From: Podarcis pityusensis
Lineage: Eukaryota
Length of the DNA: 64,000 nt
Assembly (NCBI GenBank): GCA_964106645.2
Contig: OZ067039.1
Strand: one strand, 5' to 3'
This document shows, piece after piece, positions 6,644 to 58,677 of this stretch; within the stretch, counting starts at the first letter, position 1; the number at the start of each line of letters is the position of its first letter. The notes beneath the pieces are model-generated. The model was not told the origin of the DNA, did not search any database, and saw only the letters and a program-made list of their open reading frames with translations. The position numbers and the translations under genes were made by a program.

Positions 6644-7814
6644 GTCAACCTTTTAGTCCCTTGAAAAGTACAAAGAGCCGAACAGGGAAGTTGGAATGAT
6701 GCTCTGTCACACTTTCTCTTTCAGCTCTATGTGCTTTTCAAGGCTCAGATTATTTCTGCTGGAATCCATTTTTACCCAGATCACTCAGGAAAGCAAGGTC
6801 TCTCTCTGTGTGTGCTTTCTCTCTTTTTGTGTATGGCTTATTTAGTGGAGCAGGGGAGAGAAGTGGCCAGAAGGCGGGGGGCACACACTCAAAAATCTAA
6901 GTGTGACCACAGGCCAGAAAAGGCTGGTGCCTCCTGCTTTAATGTTTTCATCAAGTATATGACCTATACTTTCAGAAATGAATGGGAACTTTAGATGCAT
7001 CAATTTTCAGTGCTTGCTCTGTTTGTGTCTGCTAAAGAGTAGCAGGTACTTCTCTAAGAACCCATCCTCACAGCACAAGTGCATCTTTGAAACAGTCTGC
7101 GTCAACTTCCAGCTGTGAATTCCAAATGACGGGGTCATTGTATAAAAGCCACAACTGAACAACACAGGGATGCTCTTTCTGCAGATTGCTTGCAAGACTA
7201 GCCTGCAGCGGCATGCAGAACATCAGATACATCTCATTGTGGCACTGACAGTCTTCACACAACCACTGCAGTGTGGGGCACCCATGGCTGAAATATAGTA
7301 AGATATGTACCAGCTAGTTGCTTTCAAGACAAAGGAATAAATGCCACTGCTCTTAGAGTTGTGCTTTCTTTGACTCCAGATCCCTTCCTCTAGGATTTTT
7401 GATTCATCATCATATGCTTTATCTGAATTGTTAACTCAGGATGAGATAAAGGAAAACACAGCTTTACTGGTTCTTCTTTTGGGGGGCAGCCACTGCCAAA
7501 ATTGGTAGAATCAGAGGGGGCTTATTTTGTCTTGAGTTTTTAAATTCTGCAATTGGTGTCTTTGCCTTGATACTGGTCGTTGACCATAAGAAAACGACTT
7601 GACAGAGGGGGCTGAAAAAAATGGTTCAGGGGCGAATCTGGCCCTTGAACTGGGGGCTAAACACACTGCTGTAAAGCATAATACAATGGCGATGATGCAG
7701 GGTAAAAATACAGTGATGGTGAGTACAAGAATTACTTTATACTCCATTGGCATTAGCAGACAGCATGGTGTCATCGTTTACATGCCCAGATGCTGTGGTG
7801 CCACTGCTCCACAG

Positions 7815-8154
7815 GGTAAAGGGACCCCTGACCATTAGGTCCAATCGTGACCGACTCTGGGGTGGCGGCGCTCATCTTGCTTTATTGGCTGAGGGAGCCA
7901 GCATACAGCTTCCGGGTCATATGGCCAGCATGACTAAGCCGCTTCTGGCGAACCAGAGCAGCACACGGAAACGCTGTTTACCTTTCCGCTGGAGTGGTAC
8001 CTATTTATCTACTTGCACTTTGACGTGCTTTCGAACTGCTAGGTGGGCAGGAGCAGGGACCGAGCAACGGGAGCTCACCCCGTCGCAGGGATTCAAACCG
8101 CCGACCTTCTGATTGGCAAGTCCTGGCTCTGTGGTTTAACCCACAGCACCACCC
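7815..8154 (-). mobile_element. Sauria SINE
   Basis: The minus strand reads a tRNA-like head GTGGTGCTGTGGGTTAAACC...GGTTTGAATCC, the body, a Bov-B-related GAGTCGGTCACGA, and a CCTTTACC tail. Confidence 0.92.
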
Positions 8155-20389: not shown

Positions 20390-20930
20390 TAATAATAATT
20401 TTATAATAATTTATTATTTATACCCCGCCCATCTGGCTGGGTTTTCCCAGCCACTCTGGGCGGCTCCCAATAGAATATTAAAAACATGATAAAACTTCAA
20501 ACATTTAAAACTTCCCTAAACTTTAGATGTTTTCTAAAAGTCAGGTAGTTGCTTATTTCCTTGACATCTGGTGGGAGGGTGTTAAAAACACGATGAAACA
20601 TCAGTCATTAAAAACTTCCCTAAACAGGGCTACCTTCATATGTCTTCTAAATGTCAGATAGTTGTTTATCTCTTTGACATCTGTTGGGAGGGCATTCCAC
20701 AGGGTGGGTGCAACTACCGAGAAGGCCCTCTCCCTGGTTCCCTGTAACTTGGCTTCTCACGGTGAGGGAACCGCCAGAAGGCCCTCGGCGCTGGATCTCA
20801 GTGTCTGGGCTGAATGATGGGGATGGAGACGCTCCTTCAGGTATGCTGGGCCGAGGACATTTAGGACTTTAAAAGTCAGCACCAACACTTTGAATTGTGC
20901 TCGGAAACATACTGGGAACCAATGAAGGTC
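20390..20930 (-). mobile_element. L2 3' fragment with an internal duplication of about 105 bp
   Basis: Reverse complement of the 49.9-kb family. The segment TTAAAAAC...GACATCTG.TGGGAGGG occurs twice. Confidence 0.85.
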
Positions 20931-21053
20931 TAACTACTTGTTTTATGTGTGTTGGATCAAAGCATGACACTTTCACCTTAGAGCTGCAAATTTAAGCAGA
21001 TGCGGTATGTGATTTGGTAAAATGGTATAATCCTCTTGTTAAATGATACACGT

Positions 21054-21837
21054 TGTCAGGGCTGCCTCAAGTCTCAGTTCACAAAAGACCAACGCCAATC
21101 TCTTCTTATATACGAAAGTGTTTATTGCAGTTCATTGTTTGCTTCACATCCGAGGCGCGCAGCCCCACGTCTGTTACGCTTAGACCGTTGAAGTCCCCTC
21201 TGAGTCAGTCCCTCCCCTGCACCAGTTTAAGAAGCTTGCTCTGCTCCACCTCTTCCTCTCTTTCCTTTTCCGCAGGGTCTTCCTGCCCCCTGGGGTTTCG
21301 CCCCTCCTGGATTCCCCTGACGCGGAATCCCCAGACTGCTCTTCCCCCCTCCTGCGGGCTTTGGGACCTGGCTCTTCCTCCGGGCTCCCTGTACTTCCGC
21401 GCGCCTCTACATTTGAATTTGGCGTGCGCGCCCAACCTCTAACCTTCCTTTTGACAGTTACACTACTCCCTTCACTACTCCCCTCCCCTTCCGGGAGGGT
21501 GGCTTGCTCCGACCTCCCTCCCTTCTCTGCTGCCGGAGCTGCTTCCCCTGATACACTGGATCCTCCACCCCCTTCGCTGCACTCTGGCGGGGAGGCTGGT
21601 TCTGACGCCCAGCTGCCACTTTGGGATCCCCTGCTGGCCCCCTGTTCCTGACACGTCCCCCCTGGGGCTCCCCTGGCCCTGACCACCGACGCCCCCTTCT
21701 GGGAATCCTCTGATTCGCTGGAAAGACTCATGGAATTTCTTGAGTCATTGTCATCCTCTTCCTCGCTGTCCTGGGATTCATCCCCATCGCTCTCCATCTC
21801 CTGCCTACCCTGTGCCTCTGTCCCTGAACCCCTGACA
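21054..21837 (-). repeat. 3' LTR
   Basis: TG...CA ends, immediately preceded on the minus strand by the polypurine tract, and contains AATAAA. Confidence 0.97.
21121..21126 (-). terminator. Polyadenylation signal AATAAA in the 3' LTR (copy at 26864-26869)
   Basis: Plus-strand TTTATT, located downstream of the predicted R start and of the pol stop codon. Confidence 0.75.
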
Positions 21838-24800
21838 TCCATCCCCCCCTCGAAGCCCCCCCTTCCCCCCTCCCGCTGCTCGGGCGCAGGTTCCGGGAGC
21901 TCCGTTGTAGCGGGGGTAGATGCTGAATACAGTCCGTCGACGTCGATCTCCTCTGCTTCCAGTTCAGTGTATGAGTGCTCGAAACCAGGGTCCTCCCCCA
22001 ACACATCCAAGTCCTCCCCTCCCCCAGTTACTTCAGGCGATGCTACTTGCCAAGGCTCCCGTCGCCACCCCACTTCTGGTTGATCGTCCCACCAATAAGA
22101 GCGGTCCGTGTCCACCCCCGAGCACGATCCCCTTGGAGGGCTCGATTCCGGCGTGGTCCCCTCTGCGGAGGAGAACCCCCGGAAGGTGCTGTCTGAAAGT
22201 GTGGGCGTAAAAAGCCAGTCGTCAAAATACTCCGCTGGCATGGGCCTGTGTGGGAAGAGTGCATGGAACTCGTCTTTGAGAAGAGGTTCCTCCAGAGCAT
22301 AATCTGGCACCCAACTGTTGGCGCTGGCCGGGGTACCTTCCCTGGTGAGGAGGTATTCTACCCCCTCCTCCCCCCATCTCGAGTCCAGAATTTCCGTGGC
22401 CTCGTTGAGTGTCGGGGCCCTCGGTGACTTCCCCCCCCCTGATGACTTTCTACGTGGGTCTGGTGCCGTCCCTGGCTCCTGAAATCTGTGTGGGGCCTTG
22501 TAGGGTGTAAGCACCGACCTATGAAAGACCGGGTGCATTCTGGAACCTTCTGGGAGTGTCAACCGAAAAGCTACGGGGTTGATCCTGCCCTCAACTTGGT
22601 ATGGCCCTAGCTGTTTGTGTCCTAGCTTCTTCTTAGCCAACGACTTGGCCGGCACCGCCTGAGCTGCTAACCATACCCAGTCCCCCACCTGGATCTCTTC
22701 TCCTGCCCTCCTGTGCCTGTCTGCCTGCACCTTGTAGGCGTGTTTAGCTAGCTCCAAGTGCCGTCGTAACTCCTCGTGGACCTCCTGCAATTCTGCTGCT
22801 AAATGCTCAGCTCCCTGCGACTCCCCCTGCGTCGGTGTCTCCAACCCCGGGAAGGTTCTGGGATGTCGCCCATTGTTGGCGAAGAATGGTGTCACCCCCG
22901 TAGACGCGTGCTTCGTGTTGTTGTAGGCAAACTCGGCCATTGGTAAGTAGTCCACCCAAGTTGCAGGCTGTTGATTGGCGTAACATCGCAGGTACTGCTG
23001 CATGATGGCGTTGACCCTCTCCACTTGGCCGTTGGTTTGCGGGTGTCTCGCCGACGCTAAGTTGATCTTGACATTCAGGATGCCCAGGAGCTTCTGCCAG
23101 AAACTGGAAATGAATTGGCGACCCCGGTCGGACAAGATGGACCGTGGTAAGCCGTGCACCCGGAACACGTGGTCTATGAACAGCTTGGCGGTCTGTTCCG
23201 CTGTTGCCACCTTCGCGCAAGGAATGAAGTGCGCCATCTTGGTGAAGAGGTCTGCAACCACAAGCACCGCCGTCTTGCCTCGCGAACTGGGCAGATCAGT
23301 AACAAAGTCCAGCGCCACCCTTTCCCACGGCTGTAGTGGCGTCTCCAGCGGTTCCAGCAATCCCGCTGGCTTCTTGTGCACTGGCTTGGACCTTTGACAA
23401 GTGTCACACCTGGCGACGTAATCCGCGACCTCTCCTCGCATCTGGGGCCACCAAAAGTCCCTGGCTACTAAGTCCGCCGTCTTTTCCTTGCCGAAGTGAC
23501 CCGCGCTGGGTGCGTCGTGTAACTGCTGTAGAACCTTCGCGCGGAGATCGTCTCCCGGCACGTAGAGAGCGCCTTTGCGGGTTAGCAGGCCGTCGCGTAT
23601 CTGGAATTCGTCGTCCTTTGCTGTCCCTCTGCGCACCTCCTCCATCTTGGATTGTGCGAACGGATCCGTCTGCAGTGCGCGTCGCACCGCGTCCAGGTCC
23701 ACGGCGGCGGAAGCGCACGCCCACGCCTGCGGTGCGAAAATGTGCTTGGCTGCCACTGGTGCCGCTTCCTCGAGATACTGCGGTTTCCTGGAGAGCGCAT
23801 CCTCTATGACGTTGTTGTCTCCCGGGATATACTCTATCCTGAAGTCGAAATCCACAAAGAACTCCGCCCATCGTATGTGCCTCTGGCTCTGGAGCTTCGC
23901 CGTGCGCCAATACTCTAGGTTCTTGTGGTCCGTGCGGACCTGCACGGTGTGCTTGGCTCCGATGAGGAAGTGCTGCCACGCCTTGAAAGCCGCGTGGATG
24001 GCCAACAACTCCCTGTCCCAGATGGTGTAGTTCTGTTCCGACTTGCTGAGCTTCCGGGAATAGAAAGCGCAGGGCCTCCAGTTCCCTTGCGGATCTTCCT
24101 GCAAGAGGACGGCCCCCACTGCTCTGTCAGATGCGTCAGTCTCAACCCGCATGGGCCTGCCGGGATTCACGTGTAGCAGCTGTTCTTCGGACGCGAAGAG
24201 GCTCTTAAGTCTCCTGAAGGACTGCTCCGCCTGGTCCGTCCAGGTGAACTTTTTCTTCTTGGAACTGAGGGTGTCCGTGATAGCTGCCGTCTCTTTCGCG
24301 AAACCCCTGATGAACTTGCGGTAAAAGTTGGCGAAGCCGACGAACCTCTGGACCTCCTTCCGATTGCGCGGGCTGTTCCAGTCCAACACTGCGCGGACCT
24401 TGGCACTGTCCATGGCTAGTCCCTTGTCGGACAGCCGGTAGCCCAGGAAATCCACTTCCGTCACGTCGAACTGGCACTTCTCCAGTTTGGCGTAGAGTCT
24501 GTGCTCCCGTAGCCTCTGCAGGACCTCCTTTACGTCTCTCTCGTGAGTCTCCTGCGATTCTGAGAAGATCAGAATGTCGTCGAGGAAGCATACGCACTTC
24601 TTGTAGAGGAGTCCCGCTAGCACGTGGTGCATGAATGCTTGGAAACAGTGGGAGCCATTTTGGAGACCAAACGGCATAACTCTGTATTCATAGGTGCCCA
24701 GCGGCGTGAACATGGCCGTCTTCCACTCGTCACCTTCCCTCATGCGTATTAGATTGTATGCTCCGCGTAGATCCAACTTGGTGAAGACCCTCCCCTTCCT

Positions 24801-25718
24801 CACTGTCGCGAGCAGGTCGTCAATTTTGGGCATGGGGAAAGCCTTGGGCTTTGTCATCGAGTTTATGGCCCTATAGTCCACAATGAGTCTTTTTGGGGGG
24901 GTGTCCTTCTTCTTCACGAAAAACACAGGACTGCCCCCCACTGCCTTGGATTCTCGGATGAATCCCCTCTTCAAATTGTGATCTATGAACTCCCTGAGTT
25001 CCTGCATCTCATCTTCAGACATGGAATACAGCTTCGCAGTCGGCAGCGTCGCCCCTGGTAAGAGGTCAATTGCACAGTCGTAGGGCCGGTGGGGTGGTAA
25101 TTGGTCAGCTTCCTTTTCACAGAAGACCTCCAAAAACCCCTTGTACTTGTGAGGCACTGCCTGCACCATGCCGAGATGCAACTGTTGCCCTTCCTCCTGG
25201 CCCTCCTCCTCCGGGCCGGACTGGATGCAATGTTGTGTGCAGTAGGACGAGCCAAAGGTGAGCTGCCGCTGGTACCACGCTAATGATGGGCTGTGTCTAT
25301 CCAGCCAACTCATGCCTAACACTATAGGCGTGTCTGACAGTCGGGTGACGTTGAAACTGATGACCTCGCGATGATTCCCAATTTGCATGAGCATGGGTGG
25401 CGTCTGGTGTACCACTTGCCCGCCCAGCAACTTCCTGCCATCTACCGTGACGACGTTCAGAGGCAGCGTGGCTGGTAGAAGCGCTATGCGATGCTGCTTG
25501 ATGAACTGCGCCCCCACGAAGTCTGCGTTGCTCCCTGAGTCAATTGTAATGGGGACTTCCAGGGTGAGTCCATTAGGTAGCTGGAGAGTAGCAGTGAGTT
25601 GCACCACTGGCTTGGGTGGTAGGGGATTTGTAGGCTGCAAAAGCACTGGGGACTGCTTCACTGACTTGCCTGGCTGAGCCCCAGCATCTCTGCTTCCAGC
25701 CAGGCATTGTCGTTTCCC
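21180..25718 (-). CDS. pol: Pol (PR-RT-RNase H-IN-chromodomain plus long tail), predicted about 1851-aa Gag-Pol made by -1 frameshift
   Basis: Uninterrupted ORF with PR IDSGS; RT LDLRGAY, MPFGL, FLDD; RNase H TDAS, RELLAI, TDHKNL, DALSR; IN HHCC, LDFV, SDRG, VERVN and GPY; chromodomain EILDSR...YLL...NSWVP. Its frame is -1 relative to gag. Stop TAA at 21180-21182 lies inside the 3' LTR. Confidence 0.96.
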   Translation of the reverse strand, partial: GKRQCLAGSRDAGAQPGKSVKQSPVLLQPTNPLPPKPVVQLTATLQLPNGLTLEVPITIDSGSNADFVGAQFIKQHRIALLPATLPLNVVTVDGRKLLGGQVVHQTPPMLMQIGNHREVISFNVTRLSDTPIVLGMSWLDRHSPSLAWYQRQLTFGSSYCTQHCIQSGPEEEGQEEGQQLHLGMVQAVPHKYKGFLEVFCEKEADQLPPHRPYDCAIDLLPGATLPTAKLYSMSEDEMQELREFIDHNLKRGFIRESKAVGGSPVFFVKKKDTPPKRLIVDYRAINSMTKPKAFPMPKIDDLLATVRKGRVFTKLDLRGAYNLIRMREGDEWKTAMFTPLGTYEYRVMPFGLQNGSHCFQAFMHHVLAGLLYKKCVCFLDDILIFSESQETHERDVKEVLQRLREHRLYAKLEKCQFDVTEVDFLGYRLSDKGLAMDSAKVRAVLDWNSPRNRKEVQRFVGFANFYRKFIRGFAKETAAITDTLSSKKKKFTWTDQAEQSFRRLKSLFASEEQLLHVNPGRPMRVETDASDRAVGAVLLQEDPQGNWRPCAFYSRKLSKSEQNYTIWDRELLAIHAAFKAWQHFLIGAKHTVQVRTDHKNLEYWRTAKLQSQRHIRWAEFFVDFDFRIEYIPGDNNVIEDALSRKPQYLEEAAPVAAKHIFAPQAWACASAAVDLDAVRRALQTDPFAQSKMEEVRRGTAKDDEFQIRDGLLTRKGALYVPGDDLRAKVLQQLHDAPSAGHFGKEKTADLVARDFWWPQMRGEVADYVARCDTCQRSKPVHKKPAGLLEPLETPLQPWERVALDFVTDLPSSRGKTAVLVVADLFTKMAHFIPCAKVATAEQTAKLFIDHVFRVHGLPRSILSDRGRQFISSFWQKLLGILNVKINLASARHPQTNGQVERVNAIMQQYLRCYANQQPATWVDYLPMAEFAYNNTKHASTGVTPFFANNGRHPRTFPGLETPTQGESQGAEHLAAELQEVHEELRRHLELAKHAYKVQADRHRRAGEEIQVGDWVWLAAQAVPAKSLAKKKLGHKQLGPYQVEGRINPVAFRLTLPEGSRMHPVFHRSVLTPYKAPHRFQEPGTAPDPRRKSSGGGKSPRAPTLNEATEILDSRWGEEGVEYLLTREGTPASANSWVPDYALEEPLLKDEFHALFPHRPMPAEYFDDWLFTPTLSDSTFRGFSSAEGTTPESSPPRGSCSGVDTDRSYWWDDQPEVGWRREPWQVASPEVTGGGEDLDVLGEDPGFEHSYTELEAEEIDVDGLYSASTPATTELPEPAPEQREGGRGGFEGGMDVRGSGTEAQGRQEMESDGDESQDSEEEDDNDSRNSMSLSSESEDSQKGASVVRARGAPGGTCQEQGASRGSQSGSWASEPASPPECSEGGGGSSVSGEAAPAAEKGGRSEQATLPEGEGSSEGSSVTVKRKVRGWARTPNSNVEARGSTGSPEEEPGPKARRRGEEQSGDSASGESRRGETPGGRKTLRKRKERKRWSRASFLNWCRGGTDSEGTSTV
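21838..21851 (-). other. Polypurine tract GAGGGGGGGATGGA
   Basis: Purine-rich run abutting the TG of the 3' LTR. Confidence 0.88.
25646..25718 (-). promoter_or_regulatory. -1 ribosomal frameshift signal: G GGA AAC plus predicted H-type pseudoknot
   Basis: Slippery heptamer at 25712-25718 in the gag frame, then a 5-nt spacer. Stem 1 TGCCTGGCTG/CAGCCAGGCA (25697-25706 with 25667-25676). Loop CTGGGG (25679-25684) can pair with downstream CCCCAG (25646-25651). Confidence 0.88.
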
Positions 25719-26734
25719 TGAAACTGCTCTCCTTGGAGCGCTGCCCCTGTTACTGTCGCTAAAGCTGCAGTGTGCTTCTGGAGCCTCTGGGGACACTCTT
25801 TGGCCATGTGCCGTGCACTGTCACAGATGTAACACTTCCTGGTCCCTCTAGGAGGCTTCGCCTTGACTGCTCCGGACGCTGAGGCTCCGGCAGCTGTCTG
25901 AGCCTTTGCACCACCAAGTTCCATTGGTTCCTCCCCCTCCCTCAGCAGAGGCGAGGGATGCGTACGCCCCAGGTCCCTGGGAAGAAAAGGAGGCGCTCTA
26001 GCTGGTGCGCGGACTTGGCGCCCCTCCTCACTGTGCCAAGGGCGTTCTTCGTGGCGCACTCCTATCGTGAGTGCCCTCTGCACGACGTCTGCTCGGGTTT
26101 GAGGTCTGTCCCCCCTGGCCAACTCATCTTTTACGGAGCCATGAAGCCCCTCCCAGAACAAGTCTCTCACTGCCAATGAGTCCTTTTCCCAGCCCAGCAC
26201 ATTCAGCAAAGCAAAAAAGCGAGAATGGTACTGACGCACTGTAGCCTTGCCCTGCCGCAATCCATGCATCTCCCGGCGCGCCACATCAACATCAACTGTA
26301 GATTGGAAGCAAGCGTCCATGGCTTTGATAAATTCATCAGAGTTCCTGCGGGCAGGACCATCTTCGCGCCACAAATTGCGTAACCAGACTCTAGCTTCCC
26401 CATGCAAGTGGGACACAATAAAGCCTACCTTCTCCTCCTCATCTTTGAAGTCTTTCTGAAGCAAATGCAGCGCGTATACGACGTCTGCTCTGAAACTGGG
26501 ATAATGCTTCAGGTTTCCATCGAAGTGGGCTACTAAATTGCCCCCCCTCCGTCCGAGTCCGATTCCCTCTGATCTGGACCCCGGGAACCCCTCTTTGCAC
26601 GCATGATCCCACCTGGCTTGCAGATCCTGGCATCGCGCTTCTGCTTCGGCAACTGTCTTCTGAGAGACCACTACTGCAGCGGAGAGTTCAGCAACTGCGT
26701 TTTGCAGGGTCGTTATCTGCTCCTCAGTAGTCAT
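25658..26734 (-). CDS. gag: Gag, 358 aa (coiled coil, capsid, CCHC nucleocapsid)
   Basis: First ATG after the PBS (MTTEEQ). N-terminal coiled-coil-like segment, capsid motifs HFDGN and LRQGKATVRQYHSRF, EEPMELGG, and zinc knuckle CYICDSARHMAKEC. Confidence 0.95.
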   Translation of the reverse strand: MTTEEQITTLQNAVAELSAAVVVSQKTVAEAEARCQDLQARWDHACKEGFPGSRSEGIGLGRRGGNLVAHFDGNLKHYPSFRADVVYALHLLQKDFKDEEEKVGFIVSHLHGEARVWLRNLWREDGPARRNSDEFIKAMDACFQSTVDVDVARREMHGLRQGKATVRQYHSRFFALLNVLGWEKDSLAVRDLFWEGLHGSVKDELARGDRPQTRADVVQRALTIGVRHEERPWHSEEGRQVRAPARAPPFLPRDLGRTHPSPLLREGEEPMELGGAKAQTAAGASASGAVKAKPPRGTRKCYICDSARHMAKECPQRLQKHTAALATVTGAALQGEQFQGNDNAWLEAEMLGLSQASQ

Positions 26735-26783
26735 GTCTGCCAAACTTCGTGAGCTTTGCAAAAAAAAAATTTGCGGTTTCTTG

Positions 26784-26794
26784 AGAGGGGACTT
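26784..26794 (-). other. Self-priming primer-binding site AAGTCCCCTCT
   Basis: Starts 2 nt after the 5' LTR, has no TGG start, and is the exact complement of AGAGGGGACTT at 26934-26944 in the LTR. Confidence 0.85.
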
Positions 26795-26796
26795 AC

Positions 26797-27580
26797 TGTC
26801 AGGGCTGCCTCAAGTCTCAGCTCACAAAAGACCAACGCCAATCTCTTCTTATATACGAAAGTGTTTATTGCAGTTCATTGTTTGCTTCACATCCGAGGCG
26901 CGCAGCCCCACGTCTGTTACGCTTAGACCGTTGAAGTCCCCTCTGAGTCAGTCCCTCCCCTGCACCAGTTTAAGAAGCTTGCTCTGCTCCACCTCTTCCT
27001 CTCTTTCCTTTTCCGCAGGGTCTTCCTGCCCCCTGGGGTTTCGCCCCTCCTGGATTCCCCTGACGCGGAATCCCCAGACTGCTCTTCCCCCCTCCTGCGG
27101 GCTTTGGGACCTGGCTCTTCCTCCGGGCTCCCTGTACTTCCGCGCGCCTCTACATTTGAACTTGGCACGCGCGCCCAACCTCTAACCTTCCTTTTGACAG
27201 TTACACTACTCCCTTCACTACTCCCCTCCCCTTCCGGGAGGGTGGCTTGCTCCGACCTCCCTCCCTTCTCTGCTGCCGGAGCTGCTTCCCCTGATACACT
27301 GGATCCTCCACCCCCTTCGCTGCACTCTGGCGGGGAGGCTGGTTCTGACGCCCAGCTGCCACTTTGGGATCCCCTGCTGGCCCCCTGTTCCTGACACGTC
27401 CCCCCTGGGGCTCCCCTGGCCCTGACCACCGGCGCCCCCTTCTGGGAATCCTCTGATTCGCTGGAAAGACTCATGGAATTTCTTGAGTCATTGTCATCCT
27501 CTTCCTCGCTGTCCTGGGATTCATCCCCATCGCTCTCCATCTCCTGCCTACCCTGTGCCTCTGTCCCTGAACCCCTGACA
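26797..27580 (-). repeat. 5' LTR (U3 about 26945-27580; R/U5 26797-26944)
   Basis: Matches 21054-21837 at offset 5743 with 5 substitutions seen by eye. Lies upstream of gag on the minus strand. Confidence 0.97.
26940..26976 (-). promoter_or_regulatory. LTR core promoter: TATA-like CTTAAA and Inr-like CTCAGA, predicted TSS 26944
   Basis: TTAAA starts at 26973, 29 nt upstream of the A in TCA. That A is also the first base of the PBS-complementary 11-mer. Confidence 0.7.
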
Positions 27581-27995
27581 CACGTTTTGACAAATTAAAG
27601 AGTTTAAGTGTTCACAAGGATTAATAAAATACACTGGTCTGATGGCACAAGATTAGACTGTGATGAACCCACCCTCTAGATCACCTGATCATATAAACAA
27701 ACCACTGCTAGTGGCTGGTGCTGGATCAAGTGTGTGTGTGTGTGCATGCTGTCAGTCTTCTTCTTCAAAAATAAGAAGATAAAGATGTGAGAGTTAATAA
27801 TGGTTGAGTTTTACTTTTGTTGAAAAGACAATATATAGATAATACAGCTATAGGTGTTGCACAGGAAGCACTGAGAGTCATTTGCTCACACATAAACCAA
27901 TGAGACTAGCTGCACTGGGCTGCTGGCATGTCACTGTGTCTGCAATGCCCGATTTCTCACTCAAGGAGGGAGAAATCAGAGAAAACATGGCAATA

Positions 27996-44984: not shown

Positions 44985-45231
44985 GAAGAGTTTGGATTTG
45001 GATTTGATATCCCGCCTTTCACTCCCCTTCAGGAGTCTCAAAGTGGCTAACATTCTCCTTTCCCTTCCTCCCCCACAACAAACACTCTGTGAGGTGAGTG
45101 GGTCTGAGAGACTTCAAAGAAGTGTGACTGGCCCAAGGTCACCCAGCAGCTGCATGTGGAGGAGCGGAGACGCGAACCCGGTTCCCCAGATTACGAGACT
45201 ACCGCTCTTAACCACTACACCACACTGGCTC
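44985..45231 (-). mobile_element. tRNA-derived SINE, Squam3-like
   Basis: Minus strand has A box TGGTGTAGTGG, B box GGTTCGCGTC, CORE-like GTGACCTTGGGC and a CTT tail. Second copy at 58440. Confidence 0.85.
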
Positions 45232-45307: not shown

Positions 45308-45650
45308 GGTAAAGGGTAAAGGGACCTCTGACCATTAGGTCCAGTTGTGACTGACTCTGGGGTTGCGGCGCTCATCTCGCTTTACTGGCCGAGGGAGCTG
45401 GCGTACAGCTTCCGGGTCATGTGGCCAGCATGACTAAGCCACTTCTGGTGAACCAGAGCAGCGCACAGAAACGCCGTTTACCTTCCTGCTGGAGCTGTAC
45501 CTATTTCTCTACTTGCACTGGTGTGCTTTCGAACTGCTAGGTTGACGGGAGCTGGGACCAAGCAATGGGAGCTCACCCCGTTGTGGGGATTCAAACCACC
45601 AACCTTTCGATCGGCAAGCCCTAGACTCTGTGGTTTAGACCACAGCGCCA
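45308..45650 (-). mobile_element. Sauria SINE
   Basis: Full-length homolog of 7815-8154 with an (ACCTTT)-type tail. Confidence 0.92.
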
Positions 45651-49897: not shown

Positions 49898-50163
49898 AAA
49901 GTTCCCTCACTGCGAGACGTGAGGTTACAGGCAGAGGCCTTCTCGGTAGTGGCGCCCACCCTGTGGAATGCCTTCCCATCAGATGTCAAGGAAATAAGCA
50001 ACTATCTGATTTTTAGAAGACATCTGAAGGCAGCCCTGTTTAGGGGAGTTTTTAATGTTTCATGTTTTATTGTGTTTTTAATATCCTGTTGGGAGCCCCT
50101 CACAGTGGCTGGGGAGGCTCGGTCAGATGGGCGGGGTATAAGTAAGAAATTATTATTATTATT
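49898..50163 (+). mobile_element. L2-clade LINE 3' end
   Basis: Encodes AFSVVAPTLWNAFPSDVKE...FRRHLKAALF, followed by a 3' UTR and (ATT)n tail. Confidence 0.85.
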
Positions 50164-58439: not shown

Positions 58440-58677
58440 GAAGAAGAGTTTGGATTTGATATCCCGCTTTATCACTACCCAAAGGAGTCTCAAAGTGGCT
58501 AACATTCTCCTTTCCCTTCCTCCCCCACAACAAACACTCTGTGAGGTGAGTGAGGCTGAGAGACTTCAAAGAGGTGTGACTGGCCCAAGGTCACCCAGCA
58601 GCTGCATGTGGAGGAGCAGAGACGCGAACCCGATTCCCCAGATTACGAATCTACCACTCTTAACCACTACACCACAC
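58440..58677 (-). mobile_element. tRNA-derived SINE, Squam3-like
   Basis: Close homolog of 44985-45231. Confidence 0.85.

What the first reader, a model, noticed from the sequence alone, without database searches (positions are those of the whole stretch)
26784..26976. tRNA-independent self-priming design: the 11-nt PBS pairs with the first 11 nt of the transcript
Seen: the sequence after the 5' LTR is GTAAGTCCCCTCTCAAG, with no TGG tRNA-CCA complement. Its AAGTCCCCTCT (26784-26794) perfectly complements AGAGGGGACTT (26944-26934). That 11-mer starts at an Inr-like TCA 29 nt below a TTAAA box, so it should be the very 5' end of the RNA. U5 CTTGAG can also pair with CTCAAG at the PBS edge. Known: fission-yeast Tf1 folds its first 11 nt onto the PBS and RNase H releases the primer, and this has been proposed for vertebrate sushi-type elements. 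Inference: an intact reptile element using the same mechanism with the same duplex length.
Basis: partly seen in the sequence, partly recalled or inferred. Interest (0 to 1): 0.78.

Follow-up and report, generated by a model that had tools for sequence, protein, structure and literature searches.

The report
Self-priming lizard gypsy/sushi-type retrotransposon
An intact, young LTR retrotransposon of a wall-lizard-like genome has a primer-binding site that pairs perfectly with the predicted first 11 bases of its own RNA, as in fission-yeast Tf1; this design is already known for the element's lineage, so it is a good new example and not a new mechanism.

Summary
The element lies on the minus strand. 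It has two 784-nt LTRs (27580-26797 and 21837-21054) that differ at 5 positions, a 5-bp target duplication (ACGTG), a polypurine tract, and open gag and pol frames. Two nt after the 5' LTR sits AAGTCCCCTCT (26794-26784). It is perfectly complementary to LTR positions 637-647 (26944-26934).

- **Chance:** an 11-nt match this close to the LTR end arises in 0.06-0.5% of shuffled LTRs.
- **Promoter geometry:** position 637 is the only initiator-like site (BBCABW) in the LTR with an A/T box 24-36 nt upstream (TTAAA at -29). It lies 75 nt before the LTR's only AATAAA.
- **No tRNA-type site:** there is no TGG for 54 nt after the LTR.
- **Lineage:** Pol, Gag, the LTR termini and the GGGAAAC frameshift site place the element among vertebrate chromoviruses (sushi-like). 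The closest proteins are from Podarcis muralis.
- **Relatives:** four of six evaluable distant relatives in metagenomes show the same layout with different sequences.

Not shown: the real transcription start, RNase H cleavage, or covariation in close lizard relatives.

Self-priming is already proposed for Tf1/sushi elements from fungi to vertebrates. This scan's first readers have noted the same reading at least 18 times elsewhere in this genome. Verdict: a well-supported new member of a known kind, of modest interest.

The parts
26797..27580 (-). 5' LTR, 784 nt, TGTCAGGG...CCCTGACA
   Evidence: Alignment of both ends; exact boundaries and 5 differences from the 3' LTR.
21054..21837 (-). 3' LTR, 784 nt
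27581..27585 (-). Target-site duplication ACGTG, upstream copy
   Evidence: flanks
21049..21053 (-). Target-site duplication ACGTG, downstream copy
   Evidence: flanks
26969..26973 (-). TTAAA box, 29 nt above the predicted start; one of only four A/T runs of 5 nt or more in the LTR
26944..26950 (-). TGACTCA (AP-1 consensus) whose last A is the predicted +1. CTCAGA around it fits the initiator pattern BBCABW.
26934..26944 (-). Predicted self-primer AGAGGGGACTT (LTR positions 637-647), inferred first 11 nt of R
   Evidence: the start site is inferred, not measured
26864..26869 (-). The only AATAAA in the LTR, 75 nt below the predicted start, followed by a G/T-rich stretch (inferred R/U5 border region)
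26809..26814 (-). U5 CTTGAG, possible partner of CTCAAG at the PBS edge (U5-IR-like stem, weak)
26795..26796 (-). 2-nt spacer GT between the LTR's terminal CA and the PBS
26784..26794 (-). Primer-binding site AAGTCCCCTCT
   Evidence: pairing probability 0.74-1.0 per base pair in the ensemble
26780..26785 (-). CTCAAG, overlapping the last 2 nt of the PBS
25658..26734 (-). gag (358 codons from the ATG at 26734): Retrotrans_gag, Ty3_capsid, weak CCHC knuckle
25712..25718 (-). GGGAAAC slippery heptamer in gag frame G GGA AAC, within the gag/pol overlap (pol is in the -1 frame)
21180..25796 (-). pol open frame: protease, RT, RNase H, integrase, SH3_Tf2-1, degenerate chromodomain; stays open into the 3' LTR
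21838..21849 (-). Polypurine tract GGGGGGGATGGA abutting the 3' LTR

Best explanation
This is a full-length, recently inserted Ty3/gypsy chromovirus of the vertebrate sushi-like lineage, and it is built for Tf1-type self-primed reverse transcription. Inferred steps: transcription starts at the A at 26944 (LTR position 637). The first 11 nt of the RNA fold back over about 150 nt of R-U5 onto the PBS at 26794-26784. The element's RNase H cuts after nt 11. The freed 3' end primes minus-strand synthesis across the 2-nt spacer and U5-R. Because the primer is copied again during plus-strand synthesis, each new copy regains a PBS that matches its own R start. Shown here: the anatomy, the perfect 11-bp complementarity, its statistical rarity, its position relative to promoter and polyadenylation signals, the predicted fold, and the lineage. 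Inferred: the start site, the cleavage and the priming.
For: Intact element: identical-length LTRs differing at 5 of 784 positions, TG...CA ends, 5-bp duplication, polypurine tract, open gag and pol. The 11/11 complement at offset 2 occurred in 0.06-0.5% of shuffles. Position 637 is one of only 6 BBCABW sites in the LTR and the only one with an A/T box 24-36 nt upstream; the sole AATAAA lies 75 nt downstream. The MFE and centroid folds close the 5' 11-mer on the PBS, with pair probability 0.74-1.0 whatever 3' or 5' extension is used and a duplex energy of -19 kcal/mol. There is no TGG for 54 nt and no Rfam or tRNA-like match. Lineage: PR-RT-RH-IN-SH3_Tf2-1 order; gag's only PDB hit is PEG10; the GGGAAAC site matches PEG10's (PMC2800197); the LTR ends fit the Sushi motifs TGTYANR/CNTNACA with AATAAA near the 3' end (PMC3601003); the tree places the element inside a squamate clade within vertebrate chromoviruses. 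Relatives at 36-42% Pol identity with clean LTR ends: the L038/L013/L024 family, L052, L078 and L046 each carry their own 8-9-nt LTR complement 1-2 nt after CA (p 0.003-0.045 each); in L046, L052 and L078 it lies about 35-40 nt below a TATA-like box, and L038 has one about 90 nt upstream. The tRNA-iMet-type relative L077 falls outside that clade. Literature: Tf1 uses its first 11 nt with RNase H cleavage between nt 11 and 12 (PMC7175516). Self-priming has been proposed from fungi to vertebrates (PMC4600332, PMC6317226).
Against: The transcription start is only predicted. All runs that hold the element were served as assembled contigs, which cannot show RNA ends. The one contig end near 26946 is a k-1 overlap at a branch point, not a start. 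No DNA of the close lizard relatives could be fetched, so covariation within the family is untested. The host tRNA set was not available, so priming by an internal tRNA fragment is not excluded. TTAAA is a weak TATA box, and a better one (TATATAA) lies below AATAAA. Two of six evaluable distant relatives gave weak or no complement (L023, L048), and the positive ones have 8-9 bp, not 11.
Confidence: 0.76

Rival explanations
1. Self-priming is used, but the RNA starts elsewhere, upstream of 26944, so the 11-mer is internal to the leader and the primer must be released from a 5' flap or by two cuts. This would be a variant of the Tf1 scheme, not an exact copy.
For: The start site is unmeasured. 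TTAAA is a weak TATA box. The predicted duplex forms equally well when the RNA is started 10-60 nt further upstream.
Against: Position 637 is the only initiator-like site with an A/T box at TATA distance. In Tf1 the primer is the very 5' end of the RNA (PMC7175516).
Confidence: 0.1
2. Reverse transcription is primed by a host RNA, such as an internal tRNA fragment or another small RNA, that binds at or near 26796-26770. The LTR complement would then be a leader RNA structure, for example for packaging, dimerisation or translation control.
For: Half-tRNA and non-CCA primers exist in other LTR retrotransposons (PMC6317226). The host tRNA set could not be scanned here.
Against: No TGG and no tRNA-like signal in the region. 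The 2-nt spacing and exact 11-bp match to the predicted RNA 5' end would be unexplained coincidences. The lineage is one where tRNA sites are typically absent (PMC6317226).
Confidence: 0.07
3. The complementarity is a chance match in a G-rich LTR opposite a C-rich leader and has no function.
For: Skewed composition raises the chance rate to 0.5% under the most generous search. Many windows were read, so some chance hits are expected.
Against: At the observed offset the rate is 0.06%. The match also begins at the single promoter-consistent position out of 784. Relatives repeat the layout with other sequences.
Confidence: 0.04

Closest known systems
Tf1 and Tf2 of Schizosaccharomyces pombe (and Tj1 of S. 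japonicus): self-primed Ty3/gypsy elements
   Same: The PBS is complementary to the first 11 nt of the element's own RNA. There is no tRNA site. The PBS lies next to U5. The target duplication is 5 bp. The integrase is followed by an SH3_Tf2-1 fold and a chromodomain-like region (PMC7175516, PMC4600332).
   Different: The host is a vertebrate. gag and pol are in separate frames joined by a -1 frameshift site. The LTR is about twice as long. The chromodomain is degenerate. No experimental evidence exists for cleavage or priming here.
Vertebrate Tf1/sushi group (sushi-ichi of pufferfish, amn elements; chromovirus V-clade)
   Same: Vertebrate chromovirus lineage by tree. LTR ends fit the Sushi motifs, with AATAAA close to the LTR 3' end (PMC3601003). 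gag resembles PEG10, and GGGAAAC is the frameshift site (PMC2800197). Self-priming is proposed for this group (Butler et al. 2001, as cited in PMC4600332 and PMC6317226).
   Different: No named sushi reference sequence was available for direct comparison. This family is squamate-specific, closest to Podarcis muralis predictions, and has lost a recognisable Pfam chromodomain.
Plant Tcn1-clade chromoviruses and TAR copia elements with predicted self-priming
   Same: The criterion is the same: no tRNA PBS, and a PBS complementary to a site in the element's own LTR (PMC6317226).
   Different: Different kingdoms and, for TAR, a different superfamily; the link is by mechanism only.

Membership tests
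Tf1-type self-primed LTR retrotransposons (mechanistic class) | PBS not complementary to a tRNA 3' end (no TGG...) | tested here: met
   No TGG in the 54 nt after the LTR; no tRNA gene or tRNA-like Rfam match. Internal tRNA fragments could not be tested because no host tRNA set was available.
Tf1-type self-primed LTR retrotransposons (mechanistic class) | PBS complementary to a stretch in the element's own LTR, next to U5 | tested here: met
   11/11 Watson-Crick pairs, 2 nt after the LTR's CA; occurred in 0.06-0.5% of shuffles.
Tf1-type self-primed LTR retrotransposons (mechanistic class) | The complementary stretch is the very 5' end of the transcript | tested here: inconclusive
   Promoter geometry fits uniquely: TTAAA at -29, a BBCABW initiator, and AATAAA 75 nt downstream. 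No raw RNA reads were available.
Tf1-type self-primed LTR retrotransposons (mechanistic class) | RNase H cleavage after nt 11 releases the primer | not testable with these tools
   Needs cDNA or primer mapping.
Tf1-type self-primed LTR retrotransposons (mechanistic class) | Supporting RNA structure around the duplex (U5-IR-like stem) | tested here: inconclusive
   The MFE fold adds short stems next to the duplex. The 6-bp CTTGAG/CTCAAG pairing exists but competes with the last 2 bp of the duplex and is weak statistically.
Tf1/sushi group of chromoviruses (Ty3/gypsy) | Pol order PR-RT-RNase H-IN | tested here: met
   Pfam.
Tf1/sushi group of chromoviruses (Ty3/gypsy) | Chromodomain at the integrase C-terminus | tested here: inconclusive
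   No Pfam Chromo hit even at E 10. The region aligns with the Chromo domain of a 59%-identical Podarcis relative, with one aromatic W replaced by R.
Tf1/sushi group of chromoviruses (Ty3/gypsy) | Phylogenetic grouping with named Tf1/sushi references | not tested
   No named reference sequences were at hand. A quick tree puts the element in a squamate clade within vertebrate chromodomain-bearing elements, next to a fungal/metagenome clade, and apart from a tRNA-iMet-primed relative and arachnid elements.
Tf1/sushi group of chromoviruses (Ty3/gypsy) | LTR end motifs TGTYANR ... CNTNACA, with AATAAA near the LTR 3' end | tested here: met
   TGTCAGG ... CCTGACA; AATAAA 68 nt from the LTR end (PMC3601003).
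Tf1/sushi group of chromoviruses (Ty3/gypsy) | Gag related to the sushi-derived mammalian genes (PEG10/RTL), with a -1 frameshift at GGGAAAC | tested here: met
   PEG10 is the only PDB hit (E 0.004). DUF4939 scores 26 bits, just under its cutoff. GGGAAAC is in the right frame (PMC2800197).

The most novel reading that the evidence does not exclude
The family is still mobile in lacertid lizards and truly self-primes with an 11-nt primer, the same length as in fission yeast. That would suggest the RNase H or RT of this lineage measures 11 nt from the RNA 5' end. It would also give the first vertebrate system in which self-priming could be studied on a naturally active element.
Probability: 0.3. 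Interest if true: 0.5.

Novelty: new member of a known kind. Interest (0 to 1): 0.3.

Why it matters
Self-primed reverse transcription has been demonstrated only in fission-yeast elements; for vertebrates it is a sequence-based proposal. This copy is a particularly clean vertebrate example. It is intact and young, from a family that is abundant in the sequencing runs of three other (coded) organisms, and its primer, PBS, promoter and polyadenylation signals can all be read. It is therefore a good candidate for mapping RNA and cDNA ends in lizard tissue. It also marks this abundant lizard repeat family as tRNA-independent, which is useful for annotation: LTR finders that require a tRNA PBS will miss or misjudge it. 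It does not reveal a new mechanism.

Tried and rejected
- **The look-up of encoding contigs closed:** DNA of the eight gag relatives (61-93% identity) and of the Podarcis and Anolis Pol relatives could not be fetched, so close-family covariation was not tested.
- **Scans with the gag alignment:** searches of metagenome and viral contigs found no relatives.
- **Sequencing runs:** no listed holder is on record as RNA and all runs are kept as contigs. Laying four runs gave no starts, ends or poly(A) loose ends.
- **Contig end at 26946:** the RNA-guessed run X15 has a contig ending there. I rejected it as a start site because the next contigs begin exactly 30 nt earlier, which is a k-1 overlap at a branch point.
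- **Variant table:** the read-laying table lists no substitution at 26777-26884 or 26893-27117. However, 160 rows were hidden, so this is only weak support for conservation.
- **Rfam scan:** a scan of 26600-27600 gave only noise.
- **TATATAA as promoter:** I considered the box at LTR 726-732 and rejected it. It lies below the only AATAAA, which would leave no R region.
- **Distant relatives:** perfect-match searches using raw BLAST boundaries were mostly uninformative. Only loci with verified TG...CA ends, duplications or terminal inverted repeats were used. The candidate LTR end in L003 was rejected because it overlaps a likely gag start.
- **Papers not held:** Lin and Levin 1997 and 1998, and the Esnault and Levin review.
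- **Comparisons from memory:** I made resemblances to vertebrate tRNA sequences from memory only, and they are not used as evidence.

Full report
**Anatomy**

The feature belongs to an LTR retrotransposon on the minus strand.
- Aligning both ends and extracting exact boundaries gives two 784-nt LTRs, 27580-26797 and 21837-21054. Each starts TGTCAGGG and ends CCCTGACA.
- The LTRs differ at 5 positions (0.64%).
- They are flanked by a 5-bp duplication, ACGTG (27585-27581 and 21053-21049).
- The polypurine tract GGGGGGGATGGA abuts the 3' LTR.
- The interior carries an open gag. Its ATG is at 26734, which gives 358 codons, matching the 358-aa length of the closest relative.
- An open pol follows in the -1 frame (25796-21180). 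Pfam finds protease, RT, RNase H, integrase zinc and core domains, and SH3_Tf2-1.
- The gag/pol overlap holds GGGAAAC in the frame G GGA AAC. This is the heptamer used by the sushi-derived gene PEG10 (PMC2800197).
- No second copy of the element lies in the window.

**The observation**

After the 5' LTR the minus strand reads GT, then AAGTCCCCTCT (26794-26784), then CAAG. The exact complement AGAGGGGACTT is at LTR positions 637-647, at 26944-26934 and again at 21201-21191 in the 3' LTR. Apart from the PBS itself, the 11-mer occurs nowhere else in the 64-kb window on either strand. The neighbouring bases cannot pair, so the duplex is exactly 11 bp.

**Is it more than chance?**

- The LTR is G-rich and the PBS is C-rich, so I shuffled the LTR. 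A perfect complement of 11 nt or more appeared in 0.5% of shuffles when any offset from 0 to 8 was allowed, in 0.24% for offsets 0-3, and in 0.06% at the observed offset 2.
- The position of the partner is independent evidence. The 784-nt LTR has only four A/T runs of 5 nt or more: at 100, TTAAA at 608, AATAAA at 712 and TATATAA at 726.
- It has only six matches to the initiator pattern BBCABW.
- Position 637 is the only initiator match with an A/T box 24-36 nt upstream, at -29.
- The only AATAAA lies 75 nt downstream and is followed by a G/T-rich stretch.
- The coherent reading is U3 = 1-636, an R of roughly 100 nt, and a U5 of roughly 50 nt.
- The stronger TATATAA box lies below AATAAA and cannot define an R region.
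- The 2-nt spacer between the terminal CA and the PBS is the retroviral rule for where minus-strand DNA begins (established knowledge, not tested here).

**Fold**

The RNA from 26944 to 26770 folds with its 5' 11-mer closed on the PBS in both the MFE and centroid structures (-54.7 kcal/mol, z = -2.1). Pair probabilities are 0.74-1.0 for all 11 pairs. They do not change when the RNA is extended 3' to 345 nt or started 10-60 nt further upstream. The fold therefore supports the duplex but does not fix the start site.

**Lineage**

- The best Pol matches are Podarcis muralis predictions at 88-94% identity. Next come chromodomain-bearing Podarcis (59-61%) and Anolis (50%) families, then amphibian, fish and fungal chromoviruses.
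- A quick maximum-likelihood tree puts the element in a squamate clade (support 99) inside a vertebrate clade, next to a fungal/metagenome clade. A tRNA-iMet-primed relative and arachnid elements fall outside. The careful tree search did not finish, so this is the quick tree.
- Pfam finds no chromodomain. The region nevertheless aligns with the Chromo domain of the 59% relative, with an aromatic W replaced by R, so the domain is degenerate, not absent.
- Gag's only PDB hit is PEG10.
- The LTR ends fit the published Sushi motifs, and AATAAA lies close to the LTR 3' end, as described for that clade (PMC3601003).
- Full-length chromoviruses are known to persist in reptiles (PMC3670739).

**Relatives**

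A metagenome scan with a Pol alignment returned 80 loci at 35-47% identity. I kept only elements whose LTR ends could be fixed independently, by TG...CA plus a 5-bp duplication or by a perfect terminal inverted repeat. Six families were evaluable:

| Family | Complement to its own LTR | Offset after CA | Shuffle p | TATA-like box |
|---|---|---|---|---|
| L038 / L013 / L024 | 8 nt (AAGATTAT) | 2 | 0.02-0.05 | TATATA about 90 nt upstream (L038) |
| L052 | 9 nt | 1 | 0.008 | TATATAAA about 39 nt upstream |
| L078 | 8 nt | 1 | 0.014 | TATAAG about 35 nt upstream |
| L046 | 9 nt | 1 | 0.003 | TATATAG about 36 nt upstream |
| L023 | 7 nt (weak) | 1 | 0.21 | TATAAA about 45 nt upstream |
| L048 | none | - | - | - |

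None of the six has a TGG site. L077, which falls outside the clade, has the classic TGGTATCAGAGC. So the layout recurs in this Pol lineage with a different sequence in each family.

**Reads**

Runs of several coded organisms hold the element, but all are kept as contigs and none is on record as RNA. Laying four of them showed the following:
- The summed contig depths are very large, which points to a very high copy number. Depth is higher over the LTR than over the leader, which suggests many solo LTRs.
- A minority of contigs have a 1-nt deletion at 26784, which would shorten the duplex to 10 bp.
- No substitutions are listed inside the PBS or the R start, but the table was truncated.
- Nothing locates an RNA end.

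**Comparison with what is known**

In Tf1 the first 11 bases pair with the PBS and RNase H cuts between bases 11 and 12 (PMC7175516). The same design has been inferred for Tj1 and for elements from fungi to vertebrates (PMC4600332), and it is treated as typical of the Tf1/sushi group (PMC6317226). The present element therefore works like Tf1 on all sequence criteria and sits in the expected lineage. It is a new, very clean member, not a new kind. First readers of this scan have recorded the same reading at least 18 times elsewhere in this genome. Those notes are unchecked and are not counted as evidence.

**Limits**

- The transcription start, the cleavage, the host tRNA scan and close-family covariation remain open.

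Noticed in passing
window 21180-21837 (and the same frame at 26923-27540 in the 5' LTR): The pol frame stays open through the polypurine tract and about 650 nt of U3 of the 3' LTR, adding 218 codons. This tail has no Pfam match even at E 10. Another first-reader note covers it.
   Followed up: partly
window about 22250-22400, minus strand: The integrase C-terminus aligns with the Chromo domain of a 59%-identical Podarcis relative but fails Pfam, and a cage aromatic W is replaced by R. This family seems to carry a degenerate chromodomain.
   Followed up: partly
window 25712-25718, minus strand: The GGGAAAC slippery heptamer lies in the gag/pol overlap in the correct frame, identical to the PEG10 frameshift site (PMC2800197). 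No downstream pseudoknot was looked for.
   Followed up: partly
window 26944-26950 and 27484-27490, minus strand: The LTR has two exact TGACTCA (AP-1 consensus) sites, at positions 91 and 631. The second ends on the predicted +1. About 0.05 are expected by chance for each site.
   Followed up: no
window 26500-27650, as laid on runs X5, X10, X12, X15: The family is present at very high depth in three other coded organisms and in a possibly-RNA run of a fourth. Depth is several-fold higher over the LTR than over the leader, which suggests many solo LTRs. A minority of contigs lack the base at 26784, which would give a 10-bp duplex.
   Followed up: partly
L077:7120-7230; L046:1-500; L052:6510-7200; L078:7446-7790; L038:6099-6790: Metagenome chromovirus relatives split into a tRNA-iMet-type PBS (L077, TGGTATCAGAGC) and several with 8-9-nt complements to their own LTR just after CA.
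   Followed up: yes
window 7813-8019 / 45313-45519; 45031-45225 / 58483-58677; 20576-20727 / 49936-50087: Other dispersed repeats in the window (89-96% direct pairs and an 88% inverted pair), unrelated to this element.
   Followed up: no
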